From the NCBI GenBank assembly GCA_001949185.1, contig BDGG01000001.1, positions 2,311,324-2,375,323 on the forward strand: 64,000 nt of DNA. Reading direction: 5' to 3'. This document shows positions 11,301 to 59,800 of this stretch, one piece after another. The notes under the pieces were generated by a model. That model made no database searches. It saw nothing but the letters and a program-made list of their open reading frames with translations, and had not been told where the DNA came from. Both the position numbers and the translations under genes were made by a program. The first letter of the stretch is position 1; each line of letters begins with the position of its first letter. This DNA comes from Ramazzottius varieornatus. Taxonomy: Eukaryota > Animalia > Tardigrada.

Positions 11301-14300
11301 GGAAGGCAGCCACTTAGCCAAGAAAATATCCCTCATCTCTCTGTTCCTGCTGAAGACATCTTTAGTTGAGAAATGTGTTTTGATGAGTAGAATTGTGGGG
11401 TCCTCTTCTACAAGTTTGCGTTTTGATGAATCTTCCTGCGCGAACGCAAAGCTGGGTGTGGCACCGTGAGAATCTCGCTGTGCTGTCTCCCCATATCAAC
11501 TTCAATATGACTAAACTTTTAAATATTTTCGAGCAGCCTTCAAAACGGTGCTCACGTAGCCCAGACTTCCACACTCGGAAATTCAGAAATAATGAAATCA
11601 TTTTGTGCTTTTTGAAGATTAAATTTTGGCTTGATATTTTACGTGGTCTTCCTTTCTAGAATCCGAAGCGGACATGACGGACTCGAACTCCACCAGCGGC
11701 ACCACGTCAAACCATGCTGTAGATGACGTTCACCTTTGTGGCATGTGCCAGCATGAATTCAAGTCGCTGGATAAGTTCCTGCTCCATAAAGAATCATGCA
11801 CGCCGACGAGCAGTCAGTCTGTGGAGTCCCCGCTCGTATCCAGGCCGCAAAGTCGCAACTCACAGTCACCCAACGAGAACCTTCCATCCACCTCCACAGC
11901 CTCCATTGTTACCAATAAGAACATCCAGGCCATGTTCTGTACCATCCAGCAACAACACTCGATTTTATTACAGTTAATTCAGCAACTTCTGCTGAAACTG
12001 AACACGAATGTATTGGGTGGTGGGATTAACAGACAACCAGGAAGTAGCAACATTCAGAGTCAACCTGCGGAAGCCGCACTGAACTCACCGGAATCAGGCA
12101 TTGGATCGGGATCAGACCCAGCCGGAAGAAGCGCACCGATGACTTGTCCTGTGGATGGACAGAGCTTTTCCGACCTGCGGACATTTTTGGACCATCTCCA
12201 AAGCCATAACGTAATTCTAGAAAATTGACTGATCTTATACGAATTTTTTTGGGAACAATATTATCCTTTTGGTTCCCAGAAAACGGTTTCCGTGCAGTCG
12301 GCCATTCGACAAGGTTCAGAGAAGCTCTCGAACCTCGCCAGAGAGCTGAACAATCTCGCGGGGCCTGGTTCATTAAGGACAAGTCGATCACCAGTGTCCG
12401 AAGCGAGGATGATTAACGAGCGCCGGAAGGAGTTGGAGGAAGAGGAGGAAGACCAGGTTGATGAGGACGGCGTGGATGATGTCAGCAAGGGTGCCGATGT
12501 GACACCGCTCGGACCTGATGGTCAGCCATTGGATCCTGCGTTGTACGTCGCTCTCCTACCTATCCCAGGTAGCAATGACAACTCGTGGGAACAGCTGATG
12601 GAGATCGTCGAGCCGACGGAGACAGCCAGACTGCAAGAGATGGTGGATCGTTACGACGACAAACGGGACCCTCATGAATGCGTTATTTGTAAGCGCGTGC
12701 TGAGCTGCAAGAGCGCTTTACAAATGCACTACAGGTGATAAGAGACTTTGTGCTAATTTTGAACACCCGTAGAAACTTCCATGCTCGGAAAAAGGCTACC
12801 CTAAAATTTGGTGTCTTTCTACGATATTTGAGAGTTCGCCAGATGAACTTGACAACATAGGTTTACTAAGTGGCGCACGTTTTCAATATTGATAACTGGA
12901 AGCGTGCGCCACGTTTCCTCGGGCTCGTTGTATAGTATGTAATTTGTGAAAAGACCTTTCACCGACAAGTCGGAAATTTACTCGTTGGATAGGCATTTCA
13001 CTGAAAAATCTAAATTTCGCTGTTTCCTTCAGGACGCATACGGGAGAGCGACCTTTTCGTTGCAAGCTCTGCCGGCGAGCCTTCACCACCAAAGGCAATT
13101 TGAAGACGCACATGGGTGTTCATCGCACAAAACTGATGGGTTCCTCCCCAAATCCACTGTCGAATACCCCATCCGAACCGATGTCGCGCATGTCGACCGA
13201 AATCATAGCGGTGGATAATCCGCAGAAAACGATGCCGTTGGGACCGTTGCCGAGTATGTATGATATTTCGGCTAGGCCATACGCCAGCATCCTCAACCCG
13301 GCACTGCGAAGTGGAATGCCGGGAATAGAATGGCCGCCGAATGCCACTCCGAACCGCCTGTCATCTTTCCAAAGCCTGGAAGCTTTGATTCAACGCACTA
13401 CCGGCGGAATGGGTAGGTGAAAATATTTTCTGAAGTTTTGTGAACCATTTTGGGCGGATTATCAAGTACATGCATACAGCGAACTGGTGGGATATAATGG
13501 TGAATCGGTATGTAGGTGCCTGATTAACCGACAGAGTTTTATTTGTGCTATGATTTTAGAGCGCATGCCGATGGATTTGTCATCGGCTCAAAACATGAAG
13601 GAAGTTAGGGATGGCGATGACAGTTTGTCGGGTAACAGCGATGGGGAGGATGAGCGTGAGGTGGATGAGGAGAGGAATGGATTATACGGTGGACAATCGG
13701 GGCACATAATAGAGTCATTGTTGGCCTCACAAGGCAGTCAACATCAGCACGGCACGGCTGGTGCACTTGACTTGACACCTCGCTCTCACTCGGCGACGCC
13801 CACTTCACAATCGACGGCAGGAGGAGATTTCAACGGATCGAAAATGTTGTCGTTAAACAGAAATCATAATACGACATGTCACGTCTGCTATAAGACCTTT
13901 GCGTGTCAAAGTGCATTGCAGATACATTTCCGCAGGTAAGCCATATTGCCATTGGCCTCTTCACTCTCTGACCCGGTCTCAATACTCTGCTTACTAACGG
14001 ATATCAATTAAATAATTCTCAAACGGTTCAGAAAAATCCAATAAAGTATTTTAGACAGAATCGGAGGCGGGCAAACACAACGTACAGGATCGTTGTCCGA
14101 AGTGGCGCACATTTCCCGCCAGTACCAATGATACCGTGCGCCACTTGAGATGACGATCTTGCACGTTCCGTTCGCCTGCCTTCCGAATATCCAGAAATAT
14201 CCGACGAAGTGATCGTTTTTCTTTTTATTGTAATTTTACAGTATATCAATTGACCTAACGATGTAATATATCGCGGCATTTCTAAATCATAGTCACCTTG

Positions 14301-25129: not shown

Positions 25130-26490
25130 GTGTCCTGTACGGTGGAGAGAACAGAATAGGAATTTCCACGCTGAATATCTATCGACACTCTCTGTTTAAA
25201 GAAAGAAAAGGCTCTAGATTCCCCCGTCACCTCTACAATGTTTCTTCCGACCGACTTAAACAGCTCCGTCGCACAGGGTCCCCATGGTCCGGGGTCTCCA
25301 GAACAACAGGACAGAACAGGAACTGGTTACCGATGTCCCGTTACTTCGTAATCTTTCTCTTTTCGGCGGCATCGGCAGCGAATCCGGCTTTGACCGTTGA
25401 CATGGCGAAGTTGGTAAGGGCCAGGGTGTCAACCACTGTGACGTCCCAGACGAGCTCGTTACCGTTCTTCCATGGGACTTGTGTCATACCGTCTGGTCGT
25501 CTCTTGTCCTTCCGGAAGATCCCTGGTGATTCAAGGATGGCCGGTATCTGGGCTGATGTCAGGGCACGTTTGAGCGACTCGTTTAGCGCGCTGTGTCGGC
25601 TGTAACGACCGCCACTAAACTTGCAGCTCGGCTTCGCTGTCCAAATCGGCTTGGGGAAGGATGTCGAGCACCAGTTGGTGTACGGAATGGATCCATGCCA
25701 AGAAGGCAGGAAGCGCGATCTCTTTTGTACGACGGATGCCTAATCCACCTAGATCGACCGGGAGTGTTGCTTGTCGCCACGGACCGGAAGTCATCTCAAC
25801 GTTCGTAATCTCCGCCAGACTTTCAAGAACCACCTCTTCGAACTCTTCCAATACCCACGGGACCTTCCAGACGGGAGAGCACCGAATGATGTAGAGGGAC
25901 TTGGGCAGACAAAGGCAGTTCTTTAGGAGGAAGAGGGCCTGGTGGGCAACCAGTTTAGTTTTGCCTGTACTAACTTGATCTTTCTTATTTTTACTCGGAC
26001 GACATCCTCCACACCCTCTTCCATCAGTAGAGCACCCAGCAGACTCAGGTCATTCCTGCAGGGGAAAAGGATACCTGGACAGGCGGTTGCTGCTGCTTCT
26101 TGGCTGGCTTAGCGTTCTTGAAGTGAACCACCGAACGCGAAGAGCTCACACTTGGATGGGTTCAACTCCAGTCCCACTTTCCTCCCTTCCACCACCACGT
26201 GCAAATCAAACAAGACACGACCACCGATGGTTCCATCGTCAAGATACCACACATTCAGTGGCGACTTTAGAGTCTTGGTGAGGCTCTCGATTACGAGGCA
26301 AAATAGAAGGGGCCCCAAAGGATCGCCCTGTTGCACGACCCTTGCGGACTCTATGGTGTGCTGACCGAAGAGAAGCTTTGAATTATGCCTTTAGGTCTGC
26401 CAGACGAAAGCGTGGTAGGCTGGCAAAGCTTCCTTGACAACACGGAGCAGAACGTCGCGGTGTATCGTGTTGAAAGCATTCCGGAAGCAC
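25130..26490 (-). mobile_element. Degenerate non-LTR retrotransposon (RT plus restriction-like endonuclease, CRE-like) in a p62-like intron
   Basis: RT motifs FRNAFNTIHRD, QQGDPLGPLLF, WYLDDG, GLELNPSKCE, GGLGIR; RLE motifs RH..LN, RPDG..PW..G..LVWDVT, SIDIQRGN; many frameshifts. Confidence 0.88.
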
Positions 26491-27542
26491 TATTGTACTT
26501 AGGTATCAATACGGAAATTGACGATTCGATTTCTTGATTGCAGGTGTCATTTGTGATGGCTGCGACGGAACTCGATATAAAGTATTAGGTACTTAACAGA
26601 CTCTCTCTCTCTCTCTCATTTCTTCCTGAATAAATCTTGACCTTGAATAAATCCCTTGAATGGACCTTGAATAAATCTTGTGTCCTTCTTCCAGTGCCTG
26701 GTCTGCAAGGATTTTGACCTGTGCGTCAAATGCGAGACTAAAGGAAAACACTACCAGCACACCATGTTGGTCATTCGCAAGCATCGCGATTTGAAGGTAA
26801 CGCCACCAACAGACAGTCGAGACTTTCGACCCTCTTCCGTTTTTTTCCGACGCTTTCGCCCCTGTGTAACTTAGGTGATCACTGGTTTTGATAACGAGAA
26901 TTTTTTTATCACAGAAAACGCTGTCTAAGATAGATCCCGACTTCAAGAGTCTCATCGTGGAAAAGCCCAAAACTAACGCTTCGGTCCTCCCAAATCCCAC
27001 CAAAAACCTCGCCGCCACGCAGCGAGATCTTACCGCTCTGGCCAATGGTATCAAGTCTATAAAAACCACTACCGCTAAGACTGCTACCCTGAAACCCGTG
27101 ACCAAGGCTACTACCACCACCACCAAGCAAGCCGACGCAATTCCTCCGGTCAACCCAGTGGTCCCAGTGGCAGTGGATGCCCCTCTCACCATCACCAGCA
27201 TCGAGCCAACTAAAGCTCAATCAGTGGTCGTCTCAACCGAGGACTTCCCTCCGATGCCACCGCCACCATTCTTAGCCACCGCGTCTTCAATAGCTGCCAC
27301 GAAACCAACGACCGCCACACACGTCGGGCCACCCAATGGCTCCTTTCAGTACAATCCATACAGTCCTTTCGGTGCCAATCAAATAAACGGTTTCTATATT
27401 CCCTCGGGGTTTGTCGAGAGCCCATTCTCACCATAAAATAGTAGCGGTAACGGCTCTGGCTCGTTTGGTGGATACGGTGGTCAGCCGCCGATCTACCCTC
27501 CTTCAGCTGCCGGTTATCCAAGTCGACAAAGGTTAGACTGGT

Positions 27543-27644
27543 TGCAAAATCAGGCTACGTCTTGCTATTCGAACNNNNNNNNNNNNNNNNNNNNNNNNNN
27601 NNNNNNNNNNNNNNNNNNNNNNNNAAGACGTAGCCTGATTTGCA
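27543..27644. repeat. Inverted repeat flanking the N-gap (probable small TIR element or assembly fold-back)
   Basis: tgcaaaatcaggctacgtctt before the gap is nearly the reverse complement of aagacgtagcctgatttgca after it. Confidence 0.5.
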
Positions 27645-28032
27645 TGGACGTATGTACACGCTAGCACACTGACCTAGTTTCATTTAAGCTTGGAAGACTG
27701 AGCAGAGAGCGAGCGACCAATGTCCTGTTGCACACGGCGTGACGTCACGGCATGTAAGTCGTAGCCGATGGCGCGAAACCGTTGCTTCGCGCCAAAAGTG
27801 GACGGTGGGCAGAGACTATCCATTTTTAGTGGCCGACCAGTGGTACTCGACCTAGTGACTCGGGTCTGCTGGGTGGGTGGCAGTTGTAGTGCGTAAATGG
27901 CTTCATCGTTCAAATGTGGCGTTCAGACCCGGTACAGAAAGCGAGGTCGATCGTGTAGCCGGGCTAAAATTCGATGGTAGTCGACGACCATCCACTTTTA
28001 GCCCATGCAGTACTTTGATTCGGTAGACTCAA

Positions 28033-31003
28033 ATGGATGGCCTTCGGCGAATCCATCATGAATGGAGACGCTTCCCCACCACCATGGTCACTCGCTACGA
28101 GCCCGGCAAGAAGAAGATGGCCGTCTTTCTGGTGATTGCGGATCACATTGATGGGCCGGAGCAAAAATCTGCAGGGGAATGGGCGAAACTCTTGCTGCGT
28201 TGGGCGGTAAGCGGTAATACGTTGTACTGTGGGTGCAAAAGGATATCACACAGTTCACGTCTTAGGTGGACAACTCCTGGGACATTGTGCAGGATGAATA
28301 CGGCGATCCGGTGGCGCCAATGCGGGCAAAGTGTCAAACTGGGGTATGTAAGACTATTAAACCGTCGTGTGGTACTGGTGATCTGACATCTGGTTCTTTC
28401 AGCGTTGGCGGCTCTAGAAGATGATTACGATGGTTTCGTCGGGAAGTACATTTTCAAAGCCTTGGCTCTATATCTAAAGGCGCCGGTCTATATGTGGAAC
28501 GGCGAAGTGGCAGGGGAACCGACCGTCGTGAGTAGAGGGACCATCTGAGAAATGGGGGTTCGTGGGTATGAGGTGGTACCGTTCATCATTCGACTGTTTA
28601 CAGTATAAGCGAAATGCCGTCCCGGGGCAAGACGAAGCGCACTTTTTATACTTTTCGGACGGCTTTGGCAGTCTGCGTATGACGGACCAGCTGCGGGGAC
28701 CGGTGTAGCTGATCCTGGACGAGGATGAGAACGGAGCTCGGCGCATCCGAAGCAAGACTCTCGGATGTATCGAAACGTCTCGTTCTCCACCGCCCCAAGG
28801 TCCGCTATCAGCGAAAACCCAGTCGGCCTTGACTGAATTGCAGGTACTGGTTCCGGATGCCTATAATGGGATGGTTGGTTCTGACCGTCCATTTCTAGGA
28901 AATTTACGGTATATGGTTCATGTTTTACAGTGTGTAACCGAACCGGAGCGTCGTGTGGCGAGGTTGGATGAAACAGTCGAATCAAAGACGGGGCTGTGGA
29001 TTAGTCCAGCCACATACAACAACGACACAGAGCTAGTGGCCGATTCTCCAGACGCTCTCTACCCGTCCATCAGCCCGGTGCGCGTCGACACTTTGCCAGA
29101 ACGCAACAAGCCGCCCTCTCTACCGGCGTCCCCGTAAGGCATTACCCCTAGTCCCCTAACGCCGAAAAAGATGCGGCCATTGGTACAAGATAACACTCTT
29201 ATAAAAACTCGAACATATCTGAGAGAGTTCTGTCCTTTACAGACGCCGATGGGCCAACTCTCTGTATCCACCTCAGTCATCCCTGTGGCCCCTGTGGTGG
29301 ACATTGAGCCGTCAACGTCTAGTGTCGTGCCAGATGTGCCGGTCACGACGCCGAAGCTGGCAACAGCGCGTTATAATGCACTCAACTACGGATGGGACCG
29401 TCACGAAGGTACAAACGGGTGCTCTAACGAGTGGGGCCACAATCCCTAGTGCCAATGAATATTGTATTGTCTTCTTGTAGACTGGCATACGATAACGTTA
29501 CATTGGCTTCGAAATGAAGGCCTGGCCTACTGCTGTGGAGCCCAACTAACCCCTTTAACCTCACCAAATCGAGCGGTGCAGACTCTGACGTGTAGTGCGG
29601 TTACGTTGAAGCTGTGCTGCGCACCGGGTGCCCTGAAGAAGTATAAGTGTGACACATCGATGCGCGCCCAACGTTACCATACTCTGACTAGTTTCGTCTA
29701 CTATGGAAGTGGTAAGGGATCTTGGCGAAAATCACGGCCGCGTTCACATAGCAAGCCATTACGGTGTGCCGTGTTTTTCCAGTGTTCGAAGCTGGCGATT
29801 TGCCGACAGACATGCCGGATAACGTGCGACTGAGTTTTTACAAGTCTTATACAGCCAACACAGTTGCCGTTCCCGTGAACCAGCCCATGTCGACTCAGGA
29901 GGAAGAGATGGTTTTCTATAAAGCCGCGGCCGAGCGGTTGCGATTGTCCATCAAGGCGTGCGATTATCTCGGCCCAGCTCTATTAGCGAAGATGGACAAG
30001 TGTGACGAACCGATCAAGACATCGATGGTGGTGACAAAGTTTCGACTCTAAGTCGGGAAAACACTTCAGTTGGCGGGTATCCCTGACGATAACGTCGTGA
30101 TCATTAATACGATGTATGTCGGAGACAAGCTGGGAGGCACACCAACCGAGCCGGACAACCTAGAACCATGCAAAGTGACATACGCGATCAACCGTAAGTG
30201 GTAGAACAGCTTGTGGTGAACTGCTTGTGGCACTCAAAGTGGATGGATCGCATCGACCATCCCTTTTTAAGACCATCGATGTTTGACAGCTATTCTCGAC
30301 GATGACCCACCGCAAGTAAGGGGCGAACCAACAGTAATACATGAAAGCCCGATGCAAGAGTTGCATTTTCCGTCATTGTTTACGTTGAGCACATCTATAC
30401 AATCCTGACTGAATTTCCCTTGCTGCAGGATCACGCGTTCTGGCGGTGAACCTCCGGTTCCACACGGAGGTGCCCGACATTCCGGGACTGCCTGCCTGGT
30501 TGTCCGTCAGTGGATTCAGCAAGGACAATTTTAAAAGTTCCAAGGGACTAGTATTCAACCGGGATGAATACTACACGGCTGTTCTGCCAACCTTACTAGC
30601 TGCGGCTCGTCGCGAGCTCGGTGGGGCCGCCAAGATTGTGCTCATCCACGACAATGCTCCATATCTGTCGCCGGATGCAGAGTCATGGATGAAAAAGTTG
30701 GCCAACATGTGCGGTGGGCCGCAGCCGGTGGTGCTCAAGTTGGTGAACGACAAGGGGAAGAATGAGATGAATAGACCGACGGCTCAGTTTCTCAACCCCA
30801 CTTACCAACGCAATCTGTCGGAGATGATGAAATGGCTCATGACATTTGTGATGAAACATCTGCCAGCGTCACAGTCGAGGCTGGAAAAGACTGGAGGCGG
30901 TTCGCCAGGTTGTGCAGTATGGTATGAACAACCCCGATGCCGATGGTCGTGGTTCCGAACGACCTTGCTGGACGCCAGGACTGGCCGATTCGTTCGTCAG
31001 TGA
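28033..31003 (+). pseudogene. Island gene A: spliced, degenerate, unknown protein
   Basis: Series of GT-AG introns (e.g. ~28844-28930, 30194-30289) linking protein-like segments, with in-frame stops and frameshifts; last exon contains KIVLIHDNAPYL. Confidence 0.5.
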
Positions 31004-31450
31004 TATTGTGGCTGGGTTTTCCTCTGGTCCCTCTTTTTCCAATTTGATTTTTGCTATCCGAGACTGCGGCGGGGTGAGGGCGCACACCAACCGCGGTTGG
31101 TAATTTTTTTTTGTTCAATTTGAGTAATTCCCTTTGATGTTTCATTCCTCTATAAAGGATGGTCGTCGCCGACCATCCCTTTTTAGTATGACATTTTGGT
31201 CATCAGCTACAATTTGGTTTAACGGTAAAGTAAAACTTCCGATTGCACAACTATCACTCCTGATAATTTTCCTACAGTAGTTTTAGTATTAAACGGGACA
31301 GGGAAACGTCTCGAAACGTAAAGAAAATCTAGGGAAAAGTATTCTCCTCGGCGACCGTCGCTTTAGCCTTCCACGCGGCGACCTTCTTCCCAGCGGCGCG
31401 CTGATGAGATCCGGGGGCGTCATCGCCGACGCTTCTTCCGGGGACGCTTT

Positions 31451-34400
31451 CTAAGCGGGTTTCTTGGCTGGCGACTTGGCCTTGGTCGGGGACGTCTGAG
31501 CTGCCAGTGCCGCCGTATAGGCACGGGTTTCCGTGGTGAAGCGCTCAAGATCAGCCGCCGCGGCATCGGTGTACCGCTACAAGGAAGAGTGCGTGACCGG
31601 TGAGATGACCGACAGACTGGCTATGCTGACCTACCTGCTTGGCGTCAGCCGGCAAAGCCGCCCACGCCGCCAGTGCTTCCGTCTTCAATTCGGCCGTCTT
31701 GAGCGTGGAATGTTTCTGTTGGTAGTGGTTCTTGAAGTGCGTATACGCCGCCAAGGGTCGACGAGGAGCCTATGAAGAATGAACACTATAAATGGATGGT
31801 CACGGGAGACCATCCATTTTTAGGATGAACAGTCCGACTTACATTGCCCGTGTTAGCCGGTCGTCCAACTTGCCCCTTGTTCTTCCGGTTGCGCTTGGCG
31901 CGAACCTTGAGGTTGGCCAACGAGGCCTGTTGCTCAGCGGTCAGCGGCGTATAATACCCCAAGGGCTGAATGGACAGCAGCATACGGGCGCGATTCCAAA
32001 TCTCCTGGCGCACGTAGGATGACATGCTCTTGACTCCTGGCCATGACTGTGTGTGATTGGTACTACCCGCTACAAACGGCAACATTAGAGGTCAAAGGGT
32101 ACTACCAGCGTCCAACTTACCGTTGCCCACACTTTGCTTGTTACGATCCTGACCTTTGGCTCGCTTCTTCAGTGCTTCCAGTCCGTCCACGCGCACGGGA
32201 ATGGACGTCTGCGCGACGAAGCGCTGGTACTGCGCACCGGCTGGTTAGACGGTCCAGCCTTTGCTGTTTCGGACTGCTTGCCTTTATCCGCTCGCCAAGC
32301 CTGTAAATCATAAAAATCATACGACGAAAACCAGCTAGGCACAATGGCAATGACACCGGCTTACCGCCACAACCTTTCGCAGCTCGTCCGCATCGGGGTC
32401 GTCACTTTGCCAGCCGAGAATGTCCGCCTGGGGTATCGGCACAAACTGGGCCATTTCAATCTACCACATAGATATATACACACTCGCTAAATATGGATGG
32501 ATGTCGGTGACCATCCCTTTTTAGCAACGCCTACCGTCTGATTCTTTTCTCGCTCCAGCTCCGCGGCAATGTCGTGTGGCAGTAGGACCTCGTCTGTTTT
32601 CGCCAGTGCATTAACTTCCGCTCGTGCCTGTAACCGTAAACTGCATTGCGCCGTCACATAGACGCTTAATGGTGCACCGGTTTGAACATACCTGCTCAAA
32701 GCGCCACCAGTCGGTCAAGAAGTGCAGCTGGACAATGGCCTGTTTGTTCTTTGACAAGTTCTGGTAGGTGCGACTCTTGCTGGACCATTTCGCCAGATAG
32801 GAGGAGAATGGGGCATCATCGCGGCGTGACGCGAAATAACTGGCCACATCGGGTGCGGGAGCCAGTTCATAACGACTGTCGAGAATCAGGGCTCGTTCGA
32901 CCTTGCCTGACTTTGATTGGCCAAATCGACACTTGTATTTGACCTAAGAAGAGACCGAGGTTAATAAAGTGTCTCCGAGGCCATACCGAGAACCATATAC
33001 TTGTCCTTACCTGCTGATTGGGTGGAGTGGTATTCAGGGCAGCGCTGAACGGCCACGAGTTCACGGAACAGTCGGTCAAGTCGCTAAAATTTGTAAGGCC
33101 ACTGACTGGCACGGCCGTCCCAGCCTCCACATTGTCCAAAACGTTGCCCTGTTCCTACCAACAAGTCCATCATATTAGCGTATTAGGGCACATAACTTGC
33201 TGAATACCGCCGTCACTGACCTGAAACACGGCCAAGTAACGGTCCAGCGTCTTCAACAGAGAGGCAGCTGTTGCAGGATTATCCTTCAACGCCTTCAGGA
33301 TCCAGGACCAGTTGTCGGCAAACGACTCCACTTCCGGCTCGAATCGCAAATGAAGAAGGGCCGTAGTACTGACGTCCGGACACATCATCCCGTGCAGGAT
33401 ACGCCGCTCGGATATGCCCGCCAACGAGTCTTTTGGTCGGACCAACTTGACCATGTCCGCTGCTGTTGGGTCGAAGGTCATCGTGACCTCCTCAGTCGCG
33501 TCGTCGTCCTTGTCCGTTGAGGCGGACACAGCACCAACACGCTTGCCGCGGAATTTTCGCGAGGACTTCGCACGGCGACCCTTTTTGGCGTTGGGTCTGT
33601 CTTGTCCGCTGGTCGCGTCTGTTGATGTTGCTGGGCTGCCGGAACGGCGTGGGACGAAGACGGAACCGTCATCATCTGGACTTGTTCCTGGACACCGGCC
33701 AGTGCGGGGTTTCCAGCCGTGGTGTTGGCCGCAGCATTCTCGGCCGACTTCTTCGCGCTAGGCTGCAAATAAACATGTACTGTAGCATCCACAACAGACT
33801 ATAAAGGGATGGTCATCATCAACCATCCATTATTCGGCATACCTTGAGAATATCCAATTCAATGTCGGCCTTGGCCAGGTTGTGTTCGGCCACTACCTTA
33901 ATCATCTTGGCCTCGAGCCGATCCCACGGTTCTTGGGCCTTGTGCAACTTGTGAAAGTACAGCGCGAGACTGCCACCTTTCAAGAGCATCGGCCCCATCT
34001 TAACCTCGTCGTCTTTCAGGCCCACGATGGTCCCTTGTTCCAGTTCTTTCAACAACAAACGGAGGTGGGGATAGACGTTGTTGGGCGCGGTGGCCAGCCA
34101 GCGGAGGGCCGCCATCATGTCGCTGTCCCACACCTTCTTCACCTACAACGATCGCCTGCGACGGACAAGGTACCAAACATGATATCGCACAAACGATCCG
34201 ACATAGTCAGACGGGCATATTCCGCTACTTACGTTCGGTTCAAAAGCAGACAGATAACGCTTTGTGCGGGTAAACAAATCAGCTGACACATCCCAGGGCT
34301 CGTAATCCACATTGGCCATCTGCTGCGACGGTCGCCACTCCACCAAACGAAATCGGAAGATCTTGACCCATTGGTACACGGTGGCAGCCGTGGCACGCGT

Positions 34401-35507
34401 ATGGTCAAAGTTGACAACGTTGGCGTAGACCTCGCGTTCTGCGGCCGGAAAGTCATAGACGATAAAGACCTGCAAATACAAATAGACGCTATTAATGGAT
34501 GGAATCCAGTGACCATCCAATTTTAGCGAACCAGGCTTGAGTTGCATACCGGTACTCGTGTTCTCACGGTCCAGTACCGATCAGGCAGCTCACGGCGTCG
34601 CGGGTCCTTCTCACGACGTTCCGCCACCATCTTCCTAGCGGCTAGACCATGATTGCCTACAAGCACATGTTACAATGCAATATTCACAACGGGTTTCTCG
34701 ACTTGCACGGGCAACTTACCGCTGGAGACCTTCACGAACCAAACTAGGCGAGCTTTGGCTAACCGTCTTCGCAGCACATCGATCGGCTCGCCGTGGAAAT
34801 ATGACTTTTTCTGCTTGACATCGGCCGGATCGGTGATGGTCTGCCGATCCGGCCTGCCAAGGTGTCAAACTGGAACGAATCTGTCAGCGCATCTTCCACC
34901 TCTTGCGCCCGCTGGAAGACATCCGTTCCCGCCTGTTCCGCTGCAGCCTTGTTGTGGCCAATACCCGGGATAACAACGTATGCCTTGTGCAGCGGAGTGC
35001 CATGAGGGCTCTTGTCCTGAATGTCGGCGACCTCTCGGTCGATCTTGGACTGGATCAAGTCTCTCACCAGACCATCGTCTTCAGTGGCATTGAGCAGCCG
35101 ATGTAGCGGAAAGTCCTTTGGTATCCCGCCAACTAGCAAAAAAATCACAACAACGGATTAGATTGCATACCGAGAACCGCAATGTTTCAAACTTACACAG
35201 ACGGTGCTGGTCAAACACCACATAGACGTTCTGTGAAATGATCCCGCCGGAAGTGGTGGCCTATAATCCAACAGACGTAAGAACACTAAAAATGGATGGA
35301 TATCCAGAACGATCCACTTTTAGCAACGTATAATATAATACTGACCTCCGTGCCATCGCTCAATGTATCAAGCAGAGCCCGACGTCGAGGACTAGGGTCC
35401 TTCGCTGGAGACTTGCGAGGTGACTGGGAGCCGCGAGGACCACCCGAGCGTAACGCGGACATTCCGGCAGGAACGGCTGGAACAAAGACACATTCAGACT
35501 CGTCCAT
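31451..35507 (-). pseudogene. Island gene B: ParB/Srx-like N-terminal domain plus C-terminal HMG box (about 13 exons, at least 2 apparent frameshifts)
   Basis: Splicing introns 34719-34657 and 34549-34470 gives FVKVSSGNHGLAARK...RVPVFIVYDFPAAEREVYANVVNFDHTRATAATVYQWVKIFR; splicing 31842-31770 and 31634-31577 gives NAPRRPLAAYTHFK...LKTAELKTEALAAWAALPADAKQRYTDAAAADLERF (HMG box). Confidence 0.7.
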
Positions 35508-35832
35508 AAACTCTTTAGACCCCAAGCTTCTCGTCAGTACGTCTACTGTCCATCCGCATGAGTCACATCACTCTATATATTAGGCCATACAGCATACTGT
35601 ATCGCCACGTACCCCGGTGAGGAGACGGCAGACAAAGCCAATCTGGAACAGCTGACTATCCCGCACCTGCAGCAGAGTCACGTTACGGACAGACGGAGGA
35701 TGAAGGTCCACTAAAATGGGATGGTCATCGAGAGCCATCCAATTTTAGCCAGACACAAAAAGTGTTATCAACAATCAACTAATCAACCAACAAGGTCTCA
35801 CTGTATCGGTACAATGATCGAACTCATATCAG

Positions 35833-35952
35833 TGACGTCACATTCTCACCGGCGCATAGGGTTGTACTATGACGTCACATTCTCACCGGCGCATAGGGTT
35901 GTACTATGACATCACATTCTCACCGGCGCATAGGGTTGTACTATGACGTCAC
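35833..35952 (+). repeat. Tandem repeat, 37-bp unit x 3.2
   Basis: Unit TGACGTCACATTCTCACCGGCGCATAGGGTTGTACTA starts at 35833, 35870, 35907, with a partial copy at 35944. Confidence 0.95.
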
Positions 35953-36269
35953 CATAATTTTTTCTATTATACCATCTCCATAATGCACAGACACTCAATA
36001 CATCTTCAAAACGCATACCAACGGCCGCCATTTCCGGGTGTCATGGAGAGATGGCGCCACACATCGCATGTTCGCGGCTTGGGTTGCTTATAAGTTTGTG
36101 CAGTTCCTGTGGGGCTCAGTTTCTGTGGAATTTATCATCAGCCGAAGTTGACGATGACCGAAACCTGCTCGTCCGACATCGCTGTAAGACTGTTCCTTCC
36201 TATCGAACATGAATTTACAACCAAGAGCTCTACAAAAACAAACTGTACTTGGTCGTTTCCCTAAGTGGC

Positions 36270-44722: not shown

Positions 44723-44842
44723 ACGCCTGCAACACCCGGTGTTCCCAAGCGGTCACCCATCTAAGTACTAACCGGGCCCGACGTAGCTTATCTTCCGAGA
44801 TCGAACGGGATCGGGAGCATTCTACGTGGTATGGTCGCAGGC
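44723..44842 (-). rRNA. 5S rRNA gene (single copy)
   Basis: Minus strand reads GCCTGCGACCATACC...CCGATCCCGTTCGATCTCGGAAG..AAGC...GGTTAGTACTTAGATGGGTGACCGCTTGGGAACACCGGGTGTTGCAGGC, with terminal helix I pairing and a TTTTT Pol III terminator at 44717-44721. Confidence 0.95.
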
Positions 44843-45791: not shown

Positions 45792-48112
45792 ATGAAGATT
45801 GCAATTGTGTGTTTCTCTTCCGCCTTCATTCCCTTGGCTGTGGGACAGCTTTTCTTGAACGATATCAATCTTCTCAACGATGCATCGCGGAAGGGATCAC
45901 AGCGACCAAACGTTCTTATCTTCATGGCAGATGATCTGGTAAGGCACAGAGTAAAAAGTCGAAAATCTGCAATGCTGAGTGATCACTAACTTTGAATGCG
46001 AATATTTTCAGGGTCACGCTGACGTTGGGTACTCGGAAGGGAATCTTCAAACACCGACGCCGAATATCGACAAGTTGGCATGCGATGGTGTAATACTGCA
46101 TCGTCATTACAGCGCCGCCCAGGGAAGTCCCAGCAGAGCCTCGTTCTTGACCGCCAAAAACCCCTTCACTGTCGGTAAGGACTTCTGCCCAAAGTCAACC
46201 CATTGCTTCATTCATCCCTGAAATCCAGACGGCGAAGGTAAAGATTGAGCCATCAATTACTCAAATCAGCAGAGAAATTCTTACAGGTATGCAGTCAGCT
46301 AACTTTCATGCGGGCGAACCCTGGGGTCTTCCACTTGCCTACAAAATTCAACCAGAATATTTCAAAGATTTGGGATACGCAACACACGCAATCGGAAAGG
46401 TATGAAAAATGAAAACTGTAACATTAGTCGCCTATGAGGAAGGACCATAATACCGTGATGTGCAGTACAACTGTCCGCTTTGTAGTGGAACCTTGGCGAC
46501 TCGCAACGAGCCTTCTTTCCAAGTACGCTTCCTCCACCGCTTGATACGAATTTCAAATTTCTTCCGCGTTAGATCGTACGTACGGTCCATTCTAATGATA
46601 GTAGGAGGCAGAGCGTACTTGTGGTTCCAGATAATCGAGGCTTCGATACCTGGTATGGCTTCTCGGCCGACGCCATCAACTACTTCAACTACACCGCTGG
46701 ATGGATCACACCGTTCCCCGTTTCCGGAAGAGCTCTCCGAGACCAAGGGGTCGCCGTTCCTGCTAACGTTACGAACAACGTATACGCACCTGACCTCTTT
46801 ACATCGGAAGCCGAGCAGCTTATCCGCGACTCCGATTCCCGAACCCCATTCTACATGTACTTCGCCACACCCGCACCGCATACCGCGTTCGCCGACTTCC
46901 GGGCAGTCCAGCACACCATGGCGCAGTTCGAGCTCCGCCCTGCTGTTGCCGCACTTTCTTCTCAGTTCCTCGAGCGAAAAAAGCAACTTGGTAAAAAAGC
47001 AAGACTTACACTTCCAAAATATTTCAATGATAAGAATAAAAAGAGAAGTAACTCTAAACAGAACAACATATGGGAGCCCGGTATACAAAATCGAGAAGAT
47101 TGCTGTCTCGAGTGCCGCACGCGTTTCAGCCAACGACACCGGAACCGTGCGCCACTGGGGAAAATAAGCTTGTCGAGTTTTCTGGCGGAGCTCCTCTATT
47201 AGAGAATCAGCTTTTCTCACCAAAGTCGTTTCTTTCTCAGCCGTGATTCAATCACTGGACGATTCCTTCCGACGGCTCGTGGAAGCCCTAACAAACAAAG
47301 GGATTATCAATAACACGATAATAGTCTTTCTCTCTGACAATGGAGCTCCGATTCCACAAACCGCCACCCACCTTCGCGGAAGCAACCATGGCTCGAACTG
47401 GCCGCTTCGACTGGGCAAAGGTTCCTTGTTCGAAGGTGGAGTTCGCACTTTAGCTTTCCTCTGGACGCCTCTCATACCCAAACGCGGACGCATCACAAAA
47501 CAGCTCTTTTCCAACACGGACTGGCTACCCACTCTCTACGAAGCGGTCGGCGGAAGTCTCAACGATCTACTCGCCACCGACGGACAGTCACATTGGCAGT
47601 CCCTGATCCGTGGAATGGACGACGGACCTCGGACCGAAATCGCTCTGAACATCGACGGCCTGAACAACCAAGCCGGCATGATCTACCAGGACCTCGACGG
47701 GAACCTCTACAAGTACATCAGCGGGGATGTGTTCGATAACAGTTTCACGGGATGGGCCAGAACGGAAGGAACCTCGGAAGATAACCCTATGACAGTCTTC
47801 AGTGCGGCGGCTGTCAAGTGCAATTTTCCACCAGGTGTGGAAGTCAGCCCCTGTCGTCCATGGGAAAAGCCTTGTTTGTTCGACTTAACAAATGATCCAT
47901 GCGAGGTGAATTCAATCGCGGCAAGTAACCCAGTCTTGGTGAAGCTACTGGCGCAAAAGCTTAGTCTGTACAACCAGACTGCCATACCGGCAGTAGCTGG
48001 ACCTTTTGACATCCGGGCGGATCCTGAAAACTGGAATGGAATATGGACACCGTGGCTGGATCCCCTGGAAGTCATCGACTCGAATATGGTGTCGTTCACT
48101 AATCTAAACTGA
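45792..48112 (+). CDS. Secreted arylsulfatase B-like protein, probably catalytically altered
   Basis: Signal peptide; RPNVLIFMADDL|GHADVG; TPNIDKLA; SPSRASFLT; GK|WNLG; RGFD; NNTIIVFLSDNG; NWPLRLGKGSLFEGGVR; CLFDLTNDPCE. Confidence 0.9.
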
Positions 48113-49713: not shown

Positions 49714-51192
49714 GGCTATTGAACCGTGGAAAGTCGCCCGAAGCTGTCGCACAAGGAGCCGGAAGTGGAAAACCCCAAAGGACTCAAGGAGTGATCGCGT
49801 GTACAGAGGTTTGGAAGAACCAGCCACGCTACGCGCTTGGGGTAACTGTGAAACCAGAAGGAACTCTAGGTAGAGAAAACGTTTAGTCCTACGAAACGTT
49901 TCTCTTGCGAATTTTTGGTTGTACACTGAGACAGTACCTACAGGCTACGCCGCTACAGCAGTTACAGAGGCATGAAACTTGGCGATCAGAAGGCTTCAAA
50001 TTCAGTCCGGTATGTTGGCGGTATATAACCAATGTTTACACGCAGGTAAAACAGCAGGGGTCTGCATAATTTTAATAATCCGCTCTCTGGTCGCAGGCAG
50101 AGAGTCTTGGTGTTGTGGCTATGAGCTGGCTGGTAGGGAGTTACCCGCATATTGAAACTGTACGAGATCCGGTAAGCGGAGTTCGTCACAACCAGCGGTG
50201 CCCAGTTTTTCATTCCGTCGTACGCAGAAACCTTTCTCGCTACGAGTAGAAATAATATAGAAACAACAAACGTGTCAGACAGAGGCAACTCGTTATAGAA
50301 AGCGAGGTCCCACGCATGGTTCTCTGATACTATAGGTGGCGCACGTGTACTCTGGTTGAGAAGTTCCAAAGAGGCTGGGTAGGACCACAATTCTTTTGCT
50401 TCGAAGATGGGTGTCTTTTTTCTCCAAGAATTACCTGGACTCTAGCGGCAGGATATTAGAGTGCCCTAGCGACATGTGGGATAGAAGATCGAGCCCATAC
50501 GGGATGACGTGCTTCTGCGCTGTGCACGGATCACCGCCGGTCCGAAGAATGTCTGTACTATAGCTGGGAGACCTTTTTTGCTCCTCATCCACGTATTTTC
50601 TGTTTCTTAGTTTGAAGTAATTACTCTCGCCTGCAGCAGAACTTCTCATCCAACATGGGCACTTCTCTCGGAAGCTAGCAGTTTCAATGTGGACACTGGG
50701 CTGTTTTACTGATTAAATGGAGTCCAAAGACTTAGTGGCCCATGAATGGACCTCACAGTTGGCGGCGGAAGTACTCTGCGCAGCCACTTCAAATCTCACT
50801 GCTGTTGTCCGAAGAATCATAAGCGCGGAGTTCATTGTCAAAGGAACGCTAGTTCTGGGCTCCAAACGTCTTTCATGGCTGGCAGGGTAATCAATTTTTT
50901 TTCGAGTCACTGGTGCCCGGCGAACAACCAGCCAGTGACACCGAAAAGGTGCGCCCACTTGGGAAAGAATCTTTCCAAGTTTGTTTGCCGAGCTGCCAAA
51001 CAGACTTTTGATGCTTTTTTGATACTTTGCTTTTTGATACTAAAATCCTGTTTTAGGCGGATAATAGCGCGAGCTTGCCGCTTTTTCGGTTACCGCGCTA
51101 TCGGGACCATTGAACAGCAGATTCACTCGTCATCGTCTCTCTTCTCGAAAGCTTCATCTCACCGTTTTCGGTGTATTGCGCCTCTGTACTTC

Positions 51193-51540
51193 ATGGAGGA
51201 CCATGTGGCTGGTGGTGTGAAGTTACTCGAAGAGAAAGAACTATGTAGTGTGTGTCTAGAGTTGTTCGAGTCGTGGGATCGATGCTTTCTGGCTCCGTGC
51301 CGGCATATCTTTCATATGCAGTGTATACTCAAATGGATACATATTAGTCTAGAGTTTTCTTGTCCGAGTTGCCGACAAGACATGTATTCGCCTGATCGGA
51401 AGACTTATTATGCTAGGAAGACTTTCTTCTTTTTAATGGATGTCTGTGATTTTAGTTTCGACTCGGACTTGGCTCATTTGAGCAGAATGCTAGCCAAACG
51501 AAAATCGCGCAAAACAGTGGCACTTATAAAAGGATATTGA
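51193..51540 (+). CDS. RING-H2 finger protein (exon; gene may extend to either side)
   Basis: CSVC...LAPCRHIFHMQCILKW...CPSCR is a C3H2C3 RING pattern. Confidence 0.8.
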   Translation: MEDHVAGGVKLLEEKELCSVCLELFESWDRCFLAPCRHIFHMQCILKWIHISLEFSCPSCRQDMYSPDRKTYYARKTFFFLMDVCDFSFDSDLAHLSRMLAKRKSRKTVALIKGY

Positions 51541-56899: not shown

Positions 56900-59800
56900 C
56901 TAGGCCATATCGTTCAGGGTTTGCAAGACTACTGATGTCGCCATCGTAATTCTCCAGCAGGGTACGCAGCAAGTCATGTTCATCTTTGTAACCCATATCC
57001 GCCATGGCTTGCAAGGCTTCTTCCACACGAAGCACTGTAAAAACATCGAAAATACCTCGTTAACTCTTTCCTGTGCGAAGACAACCGGCAACGAGATGAG
57101 AGCTGCGCCACTCTACCGAGCTCCTGCATACAGCGACCCATGGACAGCCTATGACGATTGAGCGTGCAGGTGTCAAAGATAGACGCACAGTTTCATCCGT
57201 GGTTTTCACGAATGAAACATCTCTTACCGGCAGACTTTTCCTCTTCCTCCAGTTCCTGCTTAGCCACCAAATCCCACCCAGTCTCTCCATCCGAGGATTC
57301 CGACTTAATGCTGACATCCGTGGAAGCTACCGCGGCCTCCACTTCTGGCTTGGGTTCTTCCTTAACGTCCCGCTGAACGACTGCCTCCTTCAGGGTCTCC
57401 ACGGCCGGTTCACGCGAAGTCTCCACGTCCATATGCACCAACTCACCTATCTGCTCAGTCAAGAACTCACAACCACGCTGCGGAAACTGCTGTGGCATGA
57501 AGGCATGCAGAACCTTCTGGACCTTGTTCTGCACGTCTTTCAGCACAGCTTCCATCGGCTGGTCCATGTCAATGTCCAGTTTTACCACTAGTCCGCCCTG
57601 ATTCTTGTCACCTAAAACAGAAACGAATACTGGATCATACATACCAAAGGATGGATTTTCGGAACGTCGACAAATTACTTCAACATGATCGTTTATCCAA
57701 GTGGCGAACGCTTTTAGCCAATAACAATAAGATATGCGCCACTTCAGGCAACGATCATGTTGATTCCATGTGGCGATTTTTTACTTCAGTTTTGCAGAAA
57801 TAAATTTATTTTCTGTTGGCTTCTTGTGTAACCTACTTTCTGCCTTCTGGACATTTTGGCGATCTTGTTGGGCAAGATGTTCGTAGTGGCTCTCGAAGGC
57901 CTGAGCCTGGGCAGCCACCTGCGCGCGCTTTCGTTTTCACCGACGGCCCTGCGAGCCATCACCCTGGGTACTGCGTGAGTGGTCTTCGTGGCGGACGTTC
58001 TGCCGCTCGGGCTACAGTCGGAAGACAGCACTCCTTGAACTAAGAACAGATTTTGTATCATCCATCCAAGCTGAATCTCCTCTTCAACAGTACTGACTTG
58101 ACTTCGCTTCTCAATATTACAAAGCTCAAACAGACGCAAAAGGAACCGGCGAATCATTTCGGCACACTCACAAGCGTTGTTATGCAGTTCGCGTTGAGCC
58201 GCGTGTTCGTGGTAAGCTTTGAAAGCGTGCATTGCCTGCGGAGCCATAGGTCCTGGGCCAGTCGCCTCAGTAGCGAAGAATCCAATGCTAGGACCACCGA
58301 CAAACCAATCTGAGAACCGTAATAAATAAATAATCACTGTAAGTCTGTGTATTGCTTCTTGCATGTTGCATGTAGGACCTATGGCCCAACTGAAACAAGC
58401 CATTGACTTACTTCCACGGTTCGGACCATTGATGTTGCCGAAAACCGGATCGCAGTTCATACGATCTTCCTCCCATTCGTCGTCTTCATGCCCCGGAGCC
58501 GCGCGAGGATGAGTCATCTTCGTGGCCAGTTGCTTCTTGGTAATCCGTTTGGGAGCCAGAAGAGCAATGCTACTATCTGCAACGCGAGAGAAAATCATAA
58601 ATTCAACTCTCTAAATAAATGTGTCACTTTTCAGCAACTCTGAAAAATGTGATCGCTCAGTTTCGAAACTTTCGGAGGTACGCGGTTTTCTCTTGAGAGA
58701 TTTTCTACAATGGCGGATTTCTGCTCTCGGTTGCTCAAATATTCTAACGGCTACCGTTCATACCTGGGTGGTTTTCCCGCTGTAAAGGCAACATGTTCTC
58801 ATGGTAGTATACGCCCTGGTCTCCAACTTCTTCCTCGGAATCGTTTTCCGCCACCGCCGTCGCGTGGAGCCCGCGCCACCGTTCCGGTCGCTAATGTTTT
58901 AGTGGGCGCCAGCGACTTGCGAGCATTCGGCTGAGTCAAATACCTGTAGGACTGAATCCTATCATCGAGACCGTACACTGGCTGCATACCTAGGACCTTA
59001 TATTTTGCTAGAAGTGTTGGTGGTGGGACCTCCATAGCAGCCGGAGGCTTCTGAAGCACCACTGGTGGTACTTGGCCTTGACGTCCTGGAGAATTCTCTC
59101 TTAGATGGCCAGAGTACGAAGCCTCGCCGGGACCTTGACGAAAACAATCCATATCGTGAGCATCAAAAGACACGCGAACACGATGGGGAAAATATTCGGG
59201 AGCTGGGCAAAAAAACTGGACAGAAGTCGTCTTCTGCAGTGGCGCAACTTTTCGGTTATACTGGCTAATAGGGTGCGCCACTCGAGAAAGACTTTGTCGA
59301 GTTTGTTTGCCTAGGTCTTCTTTTGTCGTTAACTAACCCTGTTTCGAGTTCATGGCCTGCATCTTCTGTTGCACTTGCTGCAGGTGAGCTTCTTCTCGTA
59401 TGATGGCATTGCCGCTCGAATCTCTGAGGCGTCGCAGCATTTGGACGTCACCCATAGCCTTCAGGAAAGCAGGGTTGATCCCAGCTGCTGTAATGGGGCC
59501 TGAAAACAAAACCATGGGAAACCAACGAAACAGTCATGAAGACCGAATTCACCTATTGTACCACTTCCTGAAGCCGCAGCTGGACAACCCACCAGCGACT
59601 CGATAGTAGCCTTCAACACCTTCGGAGCGCGCTCCTCCTGCTCAGGAGTAAAGATCACAGGGTTGGCTAGAACTGGGGTAACAGTGGTTGCAAAAGTTGG
59701 ACTTACAATTAGACCTGCAAGAAACCATCCAAGCAAAAAAGTCACAAAGGCCAGCATACGTACCACCTCCAGCAGCACCGGGTTCCACCGGCGGCTCCGC

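What the first reader, a model, noticed from the sequence alone, without database searches (positions are those of the whole stretch)
27650..35960. Candidate eukaryotic ParB/parS-like selfish element: ParB-like/HMG gene inside an island carrying its own fixed-geometry palindromes
Seen: an ~8.3 kb island with two convergent spliced genes and 11 copies of one 15-8-15 palindrome that I did not find elsewhere in the window. Gene B reconstructs to a ParB/Srx-like domain plus an HMG box. Established: bacterial ParB CTPases are dimers that load at repeated palindromic parS sites near their own gene, then spread to condense or partition the DNA. Inference: the island encodes a dimeric DNA-binding or clamp protein together with an array of its cognate sites, marking the whole element for partition, packaging, excision or protection from silencing. 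I recognise no transposase, integrase or capsid gene, and it fits no TE class I know. This copy appears to be decaying.
Basis: partly seen in the sequence, partly recalled or inferred. Interest (0 to 1): 0.93.

Follow-up and report, generated by a model that had tools for sequence, protein, structure and literature searches.

The report
Palindrome array in tardigrade gene pair
Two broken genes with almost no known relatives, lying tail to tail in a tardigrade genome, carry eleven copies of one 38-base palindrome in their introns and flanks only; the copies look like docking sites for a paired DNA-binding protein, but nothing tested supports the proposed link to bacterial ParB/parS.

Summary
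The window is Ramazzottius varieornatus; the two genes are annotated in fragments as RvY_00829 and RvY_00831-1. Eleven copies of CTAAAAATGGATGGTC-N6-GACCATCCATTTTTAG, plus one degenerate copy, lie between 27792 and 35748. They score 40-50 bits against a matrix built from them; the next best site in 64 kb scores 5.8 bits. All sit in non-coding DNA: 7 of 22 introns, both upstream regions and the 3' spacer.

The two arms are conserved in mirror image (r=0.73, p=0.003). The centre is always 6 bases long but varies in sequence. The arms do not co-vary. This fits recognition of double-stranded DNA by a symmetric protein, not an RNA hairpin. No target-site duplications were found.

The ParB/Srx assignment found no support: Pfam, PHROGs and PADLOC gave nothing on any exon, and the two structure models were unusable. 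The HMG box has weak support (E=0.0015 on one exon). Both genes are broken. The only relative found is one ORF, 86% identical, from another sequencing run. I could not test genome-wide distribution or mobility.

Verdict: a real, unusual, locus-confined array of probable binding sites; its function is unresolved.

The parts
27650..35960 (.). The island: a convergent gene pair plus its palindromes, bounded on the outside by TGACGTCA sites
   Evidence: It shares no DNA or protein similarity with the rest of the window.
27792..27829 (.). Palindrome copy 1, upstream of gene A
   Evidence: 43.0 bits; alignment A1
27964..28001 (.). Palindrome copy 2, upstream of gene A; the palindrome extends to 22+22 nt (27961-28004)
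   Evidence: 48.6 bits, repeat I1
28027..28064 (.). Possible degenerate copy with its arms 2 nt closer; it overlaps the first ATG of the gene A reading frame
   Evidence: It does not score with the matrix.
28861..28898 (.). Palindrome copy 3, inside gene A intron 28844-28930
30233..30270 (.). Palindrome copy 4, inside gene A intron 30194-30428; the NCBI model RvY_00829 removes this intron
31149..31186 (.). Palindrome copy 5, in the spacer between the two 3' ends
31786..31823 (.). Palindrome copy 6, the best preserved (15 of 16 arm pairs), inside gene B intron 31770-31842
   Evidence: -20 kcal/mol
32487..32524 (.). Palindrome copy 7, inside gene B intron 32461-32534
33799..33836 (.). Palindrome copy 8, inside gene B intron 33763-33842; the NCBI model RvY_00831-1 removes this intron
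34489..34526 (.). Palindrome copy 9, inside gene B intron 34470-34549
35286..35323 (.). Palindrome copy 10, inside gene B intron 35261-35345
35711..35748 (.). Palindrome copy 11, upstream of the gene B start codon
28033..31003 (+). Gene A: about 9 exons, no known relatives, broken by in-frame stops at 28706-28708 and 30049-30051. Its last two exons are the NCBI protein RvY_00829.
   Evidence: No Pfam, PDB, PHROGs or PADLOC match.
31452..35465 (-). Gene B: about 15 exons, almost no known relatives. The reading frame changes at 34837-34855, within about 33480-33700, and within 32172-32244.
31454..31769 (-). C-terminal HMG-box-like region of gene B, split by intron 31577-31634
   Evidence: Pfam HMG_box E=0.0015, 19.4 bits, profile positions 1-48 of 69, for 31554-31769. 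No PDB sequence match.
34526..34864 (-). The stretch read as ParB-like: ...LVWFVKVSSG, then an intron (about 34657-34719), then NHGLAARKM...
   Evidence: Translation. No family match for either piece or for P0004.
27732..27755 (.). Palindrome containing TGACGTCA (CRE-like), upstream of gene A
35833..35952 (.). Three tandem 37-bp repeats, with TGACGTCA at 35833, 35870 and 35944 (the 35907 unit reads TGACATCA), upstream of gene B
   Evidence: family D4
27547..27641 (.). Assembly gap (27575-27624) flanked by a perfect 17-nt inverted repeat. The left edge of the island is therefore unresolved.
   Evidence: (repeat I14)

Best explanation
The island is a convergent gene pair of Ramazzottius varieornatus with almost no known relatives, now turning into pseudogenes. 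The 38-bp palindromes belong to this pair as a unit.

The palindromes most likely act as double-stranded DNA sites for a symmetric (dimeric) sequence-specific DNA-binding protein. Each half-site is bipartite (CTAAAA, two free positions, GGATGG), and the two halves face each other across a centre of fixed length (6 bp) but free sequence.

The copies must have spread by some copying process, because 38 matching bases cannot arise eleven times independently. They were kept only in non-coding DNA while the genes still worked.

What is shown: the array, its confinement to the locus, its position outside exons, the mirror-image position-specific conservation, the lack of co-variation between arms, and the broken genes.

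What is inferred: that a protein binds the sites. My preferred reading is that the binding protein is encoded by the pair itself, with the sites serving synapsis, recombination or unit-wide regulation. Gene A would be a transposase-like enzyme, judged only by eye from a D...D...E-like pattern. Gene B would be an HMGB-type DNA-bending helper, as host HMGB1 is for Sleeping Beauty and for RAG. On this reading the pair is the remnant of a low-copy, lineage-restricted selfish element. It is not shown to be ParB-like.
For: - Eleven copies score 40-50 bits, the next site scores 5.8 bits, and there is nothing in between.
- All copies lie within 27792-35748. There are none in the other 56 kb, including introns 1-2 kb away.
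- All copies lie in the roughly 37% of the island that is not exon, which gives about 1e-5 under uniform placement (my exon model).
- Only the 38 bp are shared between copies; the flanks are at background identity (40%).
- Arms are 85% identical to the consensus against 50% for the centre (Fisher p=2e-9). Per-position conservation is uneven (p=1e-4) and mirrored between the arms (r=0.73, p=0.003).
- Arms pair in 79.5% of cells against 80.0% after shuffling, with one compensatory change. Pairing itself is therefore not what is preserved.
- Palindrome-bearing introns are only about 16 nt longer at the median (80 against 64), not 38 nt longer.
- TGACGTCA occurs 4 times in the window, all at the two outer edges of the island.
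- The homolog P0004 is 86% identical in one part of exon 3 and, by hand count, about 92% in the other. The stretch read into the intron is only about 55% identical. This indicates past purifying selection on gene B.
- HMG_box E=0.0015 on one exon.
Against: - No binding protein is identified.
- Neither gene matches any DNA-binding, transposase, recombinase or ParB family, apart from the sub-threshold HMG box.
- The structure models are unusable (pLDDT 32 and 40).
- The variable centre could reflect the known instability of palindrome centres rather than a lack of constraint.
- Uneven conservation could partly reflect subfamilies among the copies.
- No termini, target-site duplications or second copy were seen, so mobility is not shown.
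- The genome-wide distribution of the palindrome is unknown. It may be a dispersed repeat that happens to cluster here.
Confidence: 0.4

Rival explanations
1. The palindrome is a tiny non-autonomous transposon: two terminal inverted repeats back to back, MITE-like. It parasitised the non-coding DNA of an unrelated host gene pair by local hopping and has no function for the locus. Exons are free of copies because exon insertions were removed while the genes still worked.
For: - Only the 38-bp unit is shared; each copy sits in unrelated sequence.
- Arms are better conserved than the centre, as terminal repeats are in MITE families.
- Tardigrade repeat libraries are dominated by DNA transposons and unclassified repeats (PMC11071193).
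- Another short inverted-repeat or motif family (AGTGGCGCA) is dispersed through the same window.
- The best-preserved copy has an 8-of-9 flanking direct repeat.
Against: - There is no target-site duplication signal. The best flanking matches equal the random expectation (mean 4.8 against 4.65 of 8). The single 7-of-8 case is expected in about 18% of sets of twelve.
- No copy lies in 56 kb of flanking DNA, and there is no spill-over into neighbouring introns.
- There are no copies of intermediate decay.
- Host introns would have been only about 35-50 nt before insertion.
- At 38 bp, the unit is smaller than any MITE I know of (from memory).
Confidence: 0.25
2. One reading: gene B is a ParB/Srx-type CTP-dependent clamp fused to an HMG box. 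It loads at the palindromes, as ParB does at parS, and spreads to partition, package or protect a selfish element.
For: - Palindromic sites cluster around the gene, as parS sites cluster near parB.
- By eye, the stretch LVWFVKVSSG/NHGLAARK resembles the strand-GxxRxxA region of ParB/Srx.
- The site symmetry fits a dimer.
Against: - There is no ParBc, Srx or related match for any piece of gene B or for the intact homolog P0004 in Pfam, PHROGs or PADLOC at lenient thresholds.
- The motif has G where the signature arginine should be.
- There is no helix-turn-helix domain and no ParA-like partner.
- The exon searched against 1.84 billion representative proteins has no relatives at all.
- The sites are 38 bp and bipartite, unlike the 16-bp parS.
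- No episomal or partitioned form is known.
Confidence: 0.05
3. The palindromes act as RNA hairpins in the pre-mRNAs and untranslated regions of both genes, for example as substrates for an RNase III enzyme, as small-RNA precursors, or as splicing modulators.
For: - All copies could be transcribed, since they lie in introns, upstream leaders and the 3' spacer of convergent genes.
- Each copy folds to -9.5 to -20 kcal/mol, with z-scores of -2 to -7.4.
Against: - Pairing is not preserved beyond what each arm's similarity to the consensus gives: 79.5% against 80.0% after shuffling, with one compensatory change.
- The most conserved positions form a sequence block (GGATGG), not the stem as a whole.
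- The stems of 16 bp with mismatches are too short for canonical microRNA precursors (from memory).
- Rfam has no match.
Confidence: 0.08
4. The palindromes are core sites for a site-specific recombinase (arm, short crossover spacer, arm, as in loxP, FRT or dif). This would allow inversion or deletion of the exon-bearing segments between them.
For: - The geometry is inverted arms around a 6-bp centre of fixed length but varying sequence.
- Sites are spaced 0.4-1.4 kb apart across the whole unit.
Against: - Pfam found no recombinase domain on any piece.
- Centres that differ would block recombination between copies (from established knowledge of tyrosine recombinases).
- The window gives no evidence of rearranged forms.
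Confidence: 0.04

Closest known systems
Bacterial ParB/parS partition and condensation systems
   Same: Palindromic sites cluster in and around the locus, and their symmetry suggests a dimeric binder.
   Different: No ParB/Srx domain, helix-turn-helix domain or ParA partner was detected. The sites are 38 bp and bipartite, not 16 bp. They lie in spliceosomal introns of a nuclear animal gene pair. No replicon needing partition is known.
Miniature inverted-repeat elements (Stowaway or Tc1/mariner-type MITEs)
   Same: A short unit made of two inverted arms, copied into many non-coding positions, with arms better conserved than the interior.
   Different: The unit is only 38 bp, has no target-site duplications, and is confined to one 8-kb locus instead of being dispersed.
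Bacterial REP elements with their RAYT transposase genes
   Same: Short imperfect palindromes cluster around one particular gene that is thought to act on them.
   Different: No HUH/Y1 transposase signature was found. The host is an animal and the copies lie in introns. REPs are extragenic and number in the hundreds per genome.
Transposase or recombinase site arrays that use an HMG-box bending cofactor (Sleeping Beauty IR/DR with HMGB1; RAG with RSS and HMGB1/2)
   Same: Bipartite binding sites in inverted orientation, and an HMGB-type box encoded next to a possible DDE-like enzyme.
   Different: In the known systems the HMG protein comes from the host and the sites lie at the element termini. 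Here the sites are spread through the unit, and the enzyme assignment rests on a motif seen by eye only.
Introner elements (repeat families that create introns)
   Same: One repeat recurs in many introns.
   Different: The repeat lies inside introns whose other sequence and splice sites are unrelated. It also occurs outside introns, and only in one gene pair.

Membership tests
ParB/parS system | N-terminal ParB/Srx fold with the GxxRxxA (box II) nucleotide-binding signature | tested here: inconclusive
Exon-by-exon scans and scans of P0004 against Pfam, PHROGs and PADLOC gave no match. The motif reads GNHGLAA, without the arginine, and is split by an intron. The AF2 model of P0004 has pLDDT 40.
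ParB/parS system | Helix-turn-helix DNA-binding domain specific for parS | tested here: not met
   No such domain was found on any piece. The only DNA-binding signal is an HMG box.
ParB/parS system | Palindromic sites clustered near the gene | tested here: met
   Eleven palindromes lie within the 8.3-kb locus and none elsewhere in 64 kb.
ParB/parS system | Partner ParA-type ATPase, or a replicon to be partitioned | tested here: not met
   Gene A has no P-loop or ParA match. The locus lies in a 9.3-Mb nuclear scaffold.
MITE / cut-and-paste DNA transposon | Terminal inverted repeats | tested here: met
   The unit has 16-nt inverted arms.
MITE / cut-and-paste DNA transposon | Target-site duplications flanking each copy | tested here: not met
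   The best flanking matches do not differ from random positions.
MITE / cut-and-paste DNA transposon | Dispersed multi-copy distribution in the genome | not testable with these tools
   No tool here reaches the tardigrade genome. Within the window the copies are not dispersed. The metagenome and viral scans found only unrelated single sites.
DDE transposase (gene A) | RNase H-like catalytic domain recognisable by profile or fold | tested here: inconclusive
   No Pfam or PDB match. The AF2 model of P0001 has pLDDT 32. A pattern of a strand ending in D followed by a helix is seen by eye only.
HMG-box protein (gene B C-terminus) | HMG_box profile match above the curated threshold | tested here: inconclusive
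   E=0.0015 and 19.4 bits against a cut-off of 25.4, covering profile positions 1-48 of 69. The rest of the box lies on the next exon, which was not joined. There was no PDB sequence match.
Introner element | The repeat supplies the intron, including its ends, in unrelated genes | tested here: not met
   The palindrome lies 6-39 nt from either splice site, or about 158 nt from the acceptor in the long gene A intron, within otherwise unrelated intron sequence. Four or five copies lie outside introns.
Structured RNA hairpin family | Base pairs kept through compensatory changes | tested here: not met
   One compensatory change; 79.5% of cells paired against 80.0% after shuffling.

The most novel reading that the evidence does not exclude
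An animal nuclear selfish element of a new kind: a two-gene unit that encodes its own symmetric DNA-binding or recombination machinery, including an HMGB-type bending subunit. It seeds all its non-coding DNA, introns included, with cognate bipartite palindromic sites, so that the whole unit is marked for synapsis, rearrangement, copying or protection. This would be a eukaryotic counterpart in logic, though not in ancestry, of parS/ParB or REP/RAYT. It is decaying in a parthenogenetic tardigrade strain.
Probability: 0.15. Interest if true: 0.85.

Novelty: new variant of a known kind. Interest (0 to 1): 0.5.

Why it matters
If the palindromes are sites for a protein made by the same gene pair, this would be a rare animal case of a gene unit carrying its own array of recognition sites inside its introns. 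It would offer a new route by which selfish or co-regulated loci mark themselves.

The finding also gives a concrete handle on the large unclassified repeat fraction of tardigrade genomes. It supplies a precise 38-bp motif and two genes with which to search.

If the palindrome turns out to be a dispersed mini-repeat, the finding reduces to an unusually small inverted-repeat element with strong local clustering. That would be of modest interest.

Tried and rejected
- Family scans. I scanned all exon-sized pieces of both genes, plus P0001, P0002 and P0004, against Pfam, PHROGs and PADLOC. Only a sub-threshold HMG box appeared.
- PDB sequence searches of P0001 and of the HMG exon found nothing meaningful.
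- HMMER search of gene B exon 6 against 1.84 billion representative proteins found only the gene's own annotation and one spurious repeat protein.
- Word-indexed searches. The last exons of gene A found only RvY_00829. Gene B exon 3 found one homolog from a Logan assembly of a public sequencing run, P0004. Gene B exon 5 found nothing.
- AlphaFold models of P0001 and P0004, made without alignments, had pLDDT 32 and 40. They are unusable, so I ran no fold search.
- Palindrome scan of viral contigs found 15 single chance sites.
- Palindrome scan of metagenomes found 45 loci. Most are one conserved low-GC sequence family from related samples, with one site each and different flanks; I rejected them as unrelated.
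- Protein-based scans of viral and prokaryotic genome collections found no relatives.
- The island has no similarity to the rest of the window and no internal protein repeats.
- The target-site duplication test found no signal.
- Rfam found only a 5S rRNA gene elsewhere in the window.
- Literature searches found nothing on these genes, on this palindrome, or on a eukaryotic ParB-HMG element.
I could therefore not fetch the contig of P0004 or any other genomic copy.
- Exact look-ups of four neighbouring reading frames found nothing.
I redid the work from coordinates.
Full report
**Source and setting.** The last exons of the plus-strand gene are 99% identical to the NCBI protein RvY_00829 of the tardigrade Ramazzottius varieornatus, which lies on a 9.3-Mb scaffold. 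An exon of the minus-strand gene is the NCBI protein RvY_00831-1. The window is therefore nuclear tardigrade DNA. It is not human, and nothing in it resembles a toxin or an animal virus.

**The observation.** A half-site scan, a repeat finder and a position weight matrix all give the same picture.
- Eleven copies of CTAAAAATGGATGGTC-N6-GACCATCCATTTTTAG lie between 27792 and 35748.
- A possible twelfth, degenerate copy lies at 28027-28064.
- The eleven score 40-50 bits against a matrix built from them. The next best site in 64 kb scores 5.8 bits, below the best score in shuffled sequence (18.3 bits). The family is sharply bimodal, with no half-decayed copies in exons or flanks.
- The exact core is expected 0.00 times by chance.

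**Gene models.** I read the frames directly and fixed intron ends by coordinates.
- Gene A runs on the plus strand from about 28033 to 31003, with 8 introns.
- Gene B runs on the minus strand from about 35465 to 31452, with 14 introns.
- The NCBI models splice out two of the palindrome-bearing introns at exactly the boundaries I read.
- Gene A has in-frame stops at 28706-28708 and 30049-30051.
- Gene B changes frame at least three times.
- One of these breaks, at 34837-34855, is read through intact by a natural homolog, P0004. This is a 127-aa open reading frame from a Logan assembly of another sequencing run. It is 86% identical to one part of gene B exon 3.
- By hand count, the second exon part is about 92% identical, while the stretch where both reading frames run into the intron is about 55% identical. 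Gene B was therefore under purifying selection in the past.
- The statement that this copy is decaying is confirmed.

**Where the palindromes sit.**
- Seven lie in introns (2 of 8 in gene A, 5 of 14 in gene B).
- Two or three lie upstream of gene A, one lies upstream of gene B, and one lies between the two 3' ends.
- None lies in an exon, although exons make up about 63% of the island. The chance of this under uniform placement is about 1e-5, based on my exon model.
- Only the 38 bp are shared. The flanks are at background identity, and the island has no other internal repeats apart from a promoter tandem repeat.
- Palindrome-bearing introns have a median length of 80 nt, against 64 nt for the others. 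They are therefore not ordinary introns plus a 38-nt insertion.

**What kind of constraint the copies show.**
- The arms are 85% identical to the consensus and the 6-bp centre is 50% identical (p=2e-9).
- The centre never changes length.
- Conservation along the arms is uneven (p=1e-4) and mirrored between the two arms (r=0.73, p=0.003). A nearly invariant GGATGG/CCATCC block and a conserved CTAAAA/TTTTAG block are separated by two free positions.
- The arms do not co-vary. Pairing is 79.5%, against 80.0% after shuffling, with one compensatory change. Yet every copy can fold.
- A mirror-symmetric, position-specific pattern without compensation is what a site read as double-stranded DNA by a symmetric dimer would show. 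A selected RNA or DNA hairpin would not show it.
- Two caveats apply. Palindrome centres are intrinsically unstable, and subfamilies among the copies could add unevenness.

**Mobility.** I found no evidence of it.
- Flanking direct repeats are no better than at random positions. The 7-8-base repeat beside the best-preserved copy is not significant once offsets and twelve trials are allowed for.
- No terminal repeats bound the island.
- The left edge runs into an assembly gap flanked by a perfect 17-nt inverted repeat.
- The island shares nothing with the rest of the window.
- The boundaries are nevertheless sharp. No copy spills into neighbouring introns 1-2 kb away. All four TGACGTCA octamers in the window lie at the island's two outer edges. 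This argues that the palindromes belong to the gene pair as a unit, and were not sprayed in by local hopping.

**The proteins.**
- I did not build or search the joined proteins.
- No piece of gene B, and not P0004, matches ParBc, Srx or any other family in Pfam, PHROGs or PADLOC, even at E up to 1-10.
- The motif that presumably suggested ParB reads ...LVWFVKVSSG, then an intron, then NHGLAARK... It has glycine where the signature arginine should be.
- The C-terminal exon gives HMG_box E=0.0015, covering two thirds of the profile. The remainder lies on the next exon. By eye the box is of the HMGB, structure-specific type (PRRPLAAY...).
- Gene A has no match either. By eye it shows a strand ending in D (KIVLIHDNAPY) followed by helices, reminiscent of DDE transposases. 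I could not support this statistically.
- Single-sequence AlphaFold models of P0001 and P0004 had pLDDT 32 and 40, so I made no fold search.
- An exon of gene B has no relative among 1.84 billion representative proteins.
- The two genes have almost no known relatives and appear to be low in copy number.

**Searches outside the window.**
- Viral, metagenome and prokaryotic collections held nothing related. The metagenome hits are one unrelated low-GC sequence family, with a single site per contig.
- No tool reaches the tardigrade genome itself.
- The literature search found nothing on these genes or this motif. A curated tardigrade repeat study reports mostly DNA transposons and many unclassified families (PMC11071193).

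**Conclusion.**
- The array is real, statistically extreme and confined to the locus. Its conservation pattern points to protein-binding sites.
- The specific ParB/parS analogy has no support (0.05).
- The main rival is a very small MITE-like repeat with strong local clustering (0.25).
- The finding is unusual enough to merit the genome-wide scan and the comparison with the P0004 locus. On present evidence it is an unresolved oddity, not a demonstrated new class of element.

Noticed in passing
window 44724-44842 (-): A complete 5S ribosomal RNA gene (Rfam RF00001, 112.7 bits).
   Followed up: no
window 26112-26336 (-): A fragment of a non-LTR retrotransposon reverse transcriptase (Pfam RVT_1, E=4e-6, with a YLDDG motif). 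It lies just upstream of the ZZ-finger exon of the left-hand neighbour gene.
   Followed up: partly
window 12869-59282 (13 sites): The 9-mer AGTGGCGCA occurs 13 times against 0.43 expected. The sites are dispersed across the window and none lies in the island. Some copies form 40-46-nt inverted-repeat pairs (14065-14181, 57667-57776). This may be a dispersed repeat or a common promoter motif of this genome.
   Followed up: partly
window 27547-27641: The 50-N assembly gap at the island's left edge is flanked by a perfect 17-nt inverted repeat. The reading frame of the neighbouring ZZ-finger gene (exon at 26683-26796) runs into the gap without a stop.
   Followed up: partly
window 34823-34854: A perfect 11-nt inverted repeat lies inside gene B exon 3, at the point where the frame breaks relative to the intact homolog P0004. 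This looks like a mutation templated by a quasi-palindrome.
   Followed up: partly
window 27740; 35833, 35870, 35944: TGACGTCA (CRE-like) occurs only four times in 64 kb, all at the two outer edges of the island. Three of the four lie in a 3 x 37-bp tandem repeat upstream of gene B.
   Followed up: partly
L016-L060 (e.g. L017:112-141, L030:5939-5968): Many low-GC contigs from a set of related metagenome samples share a conserved sequence containing TGGATGGTC-N6-GACCATCCA. There is one site per contig and the flanks differ from the tardigrade unit. The similarity is probably a coincidence within a conserved gene.
   Followed up: partly
window 47243-48109 (+); 50746-51537 (+): Ordinary host-type genes lie nearby: the C-terminal part of a sulfatase domain and a RING-H2 finger protein.
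   Followed up: no
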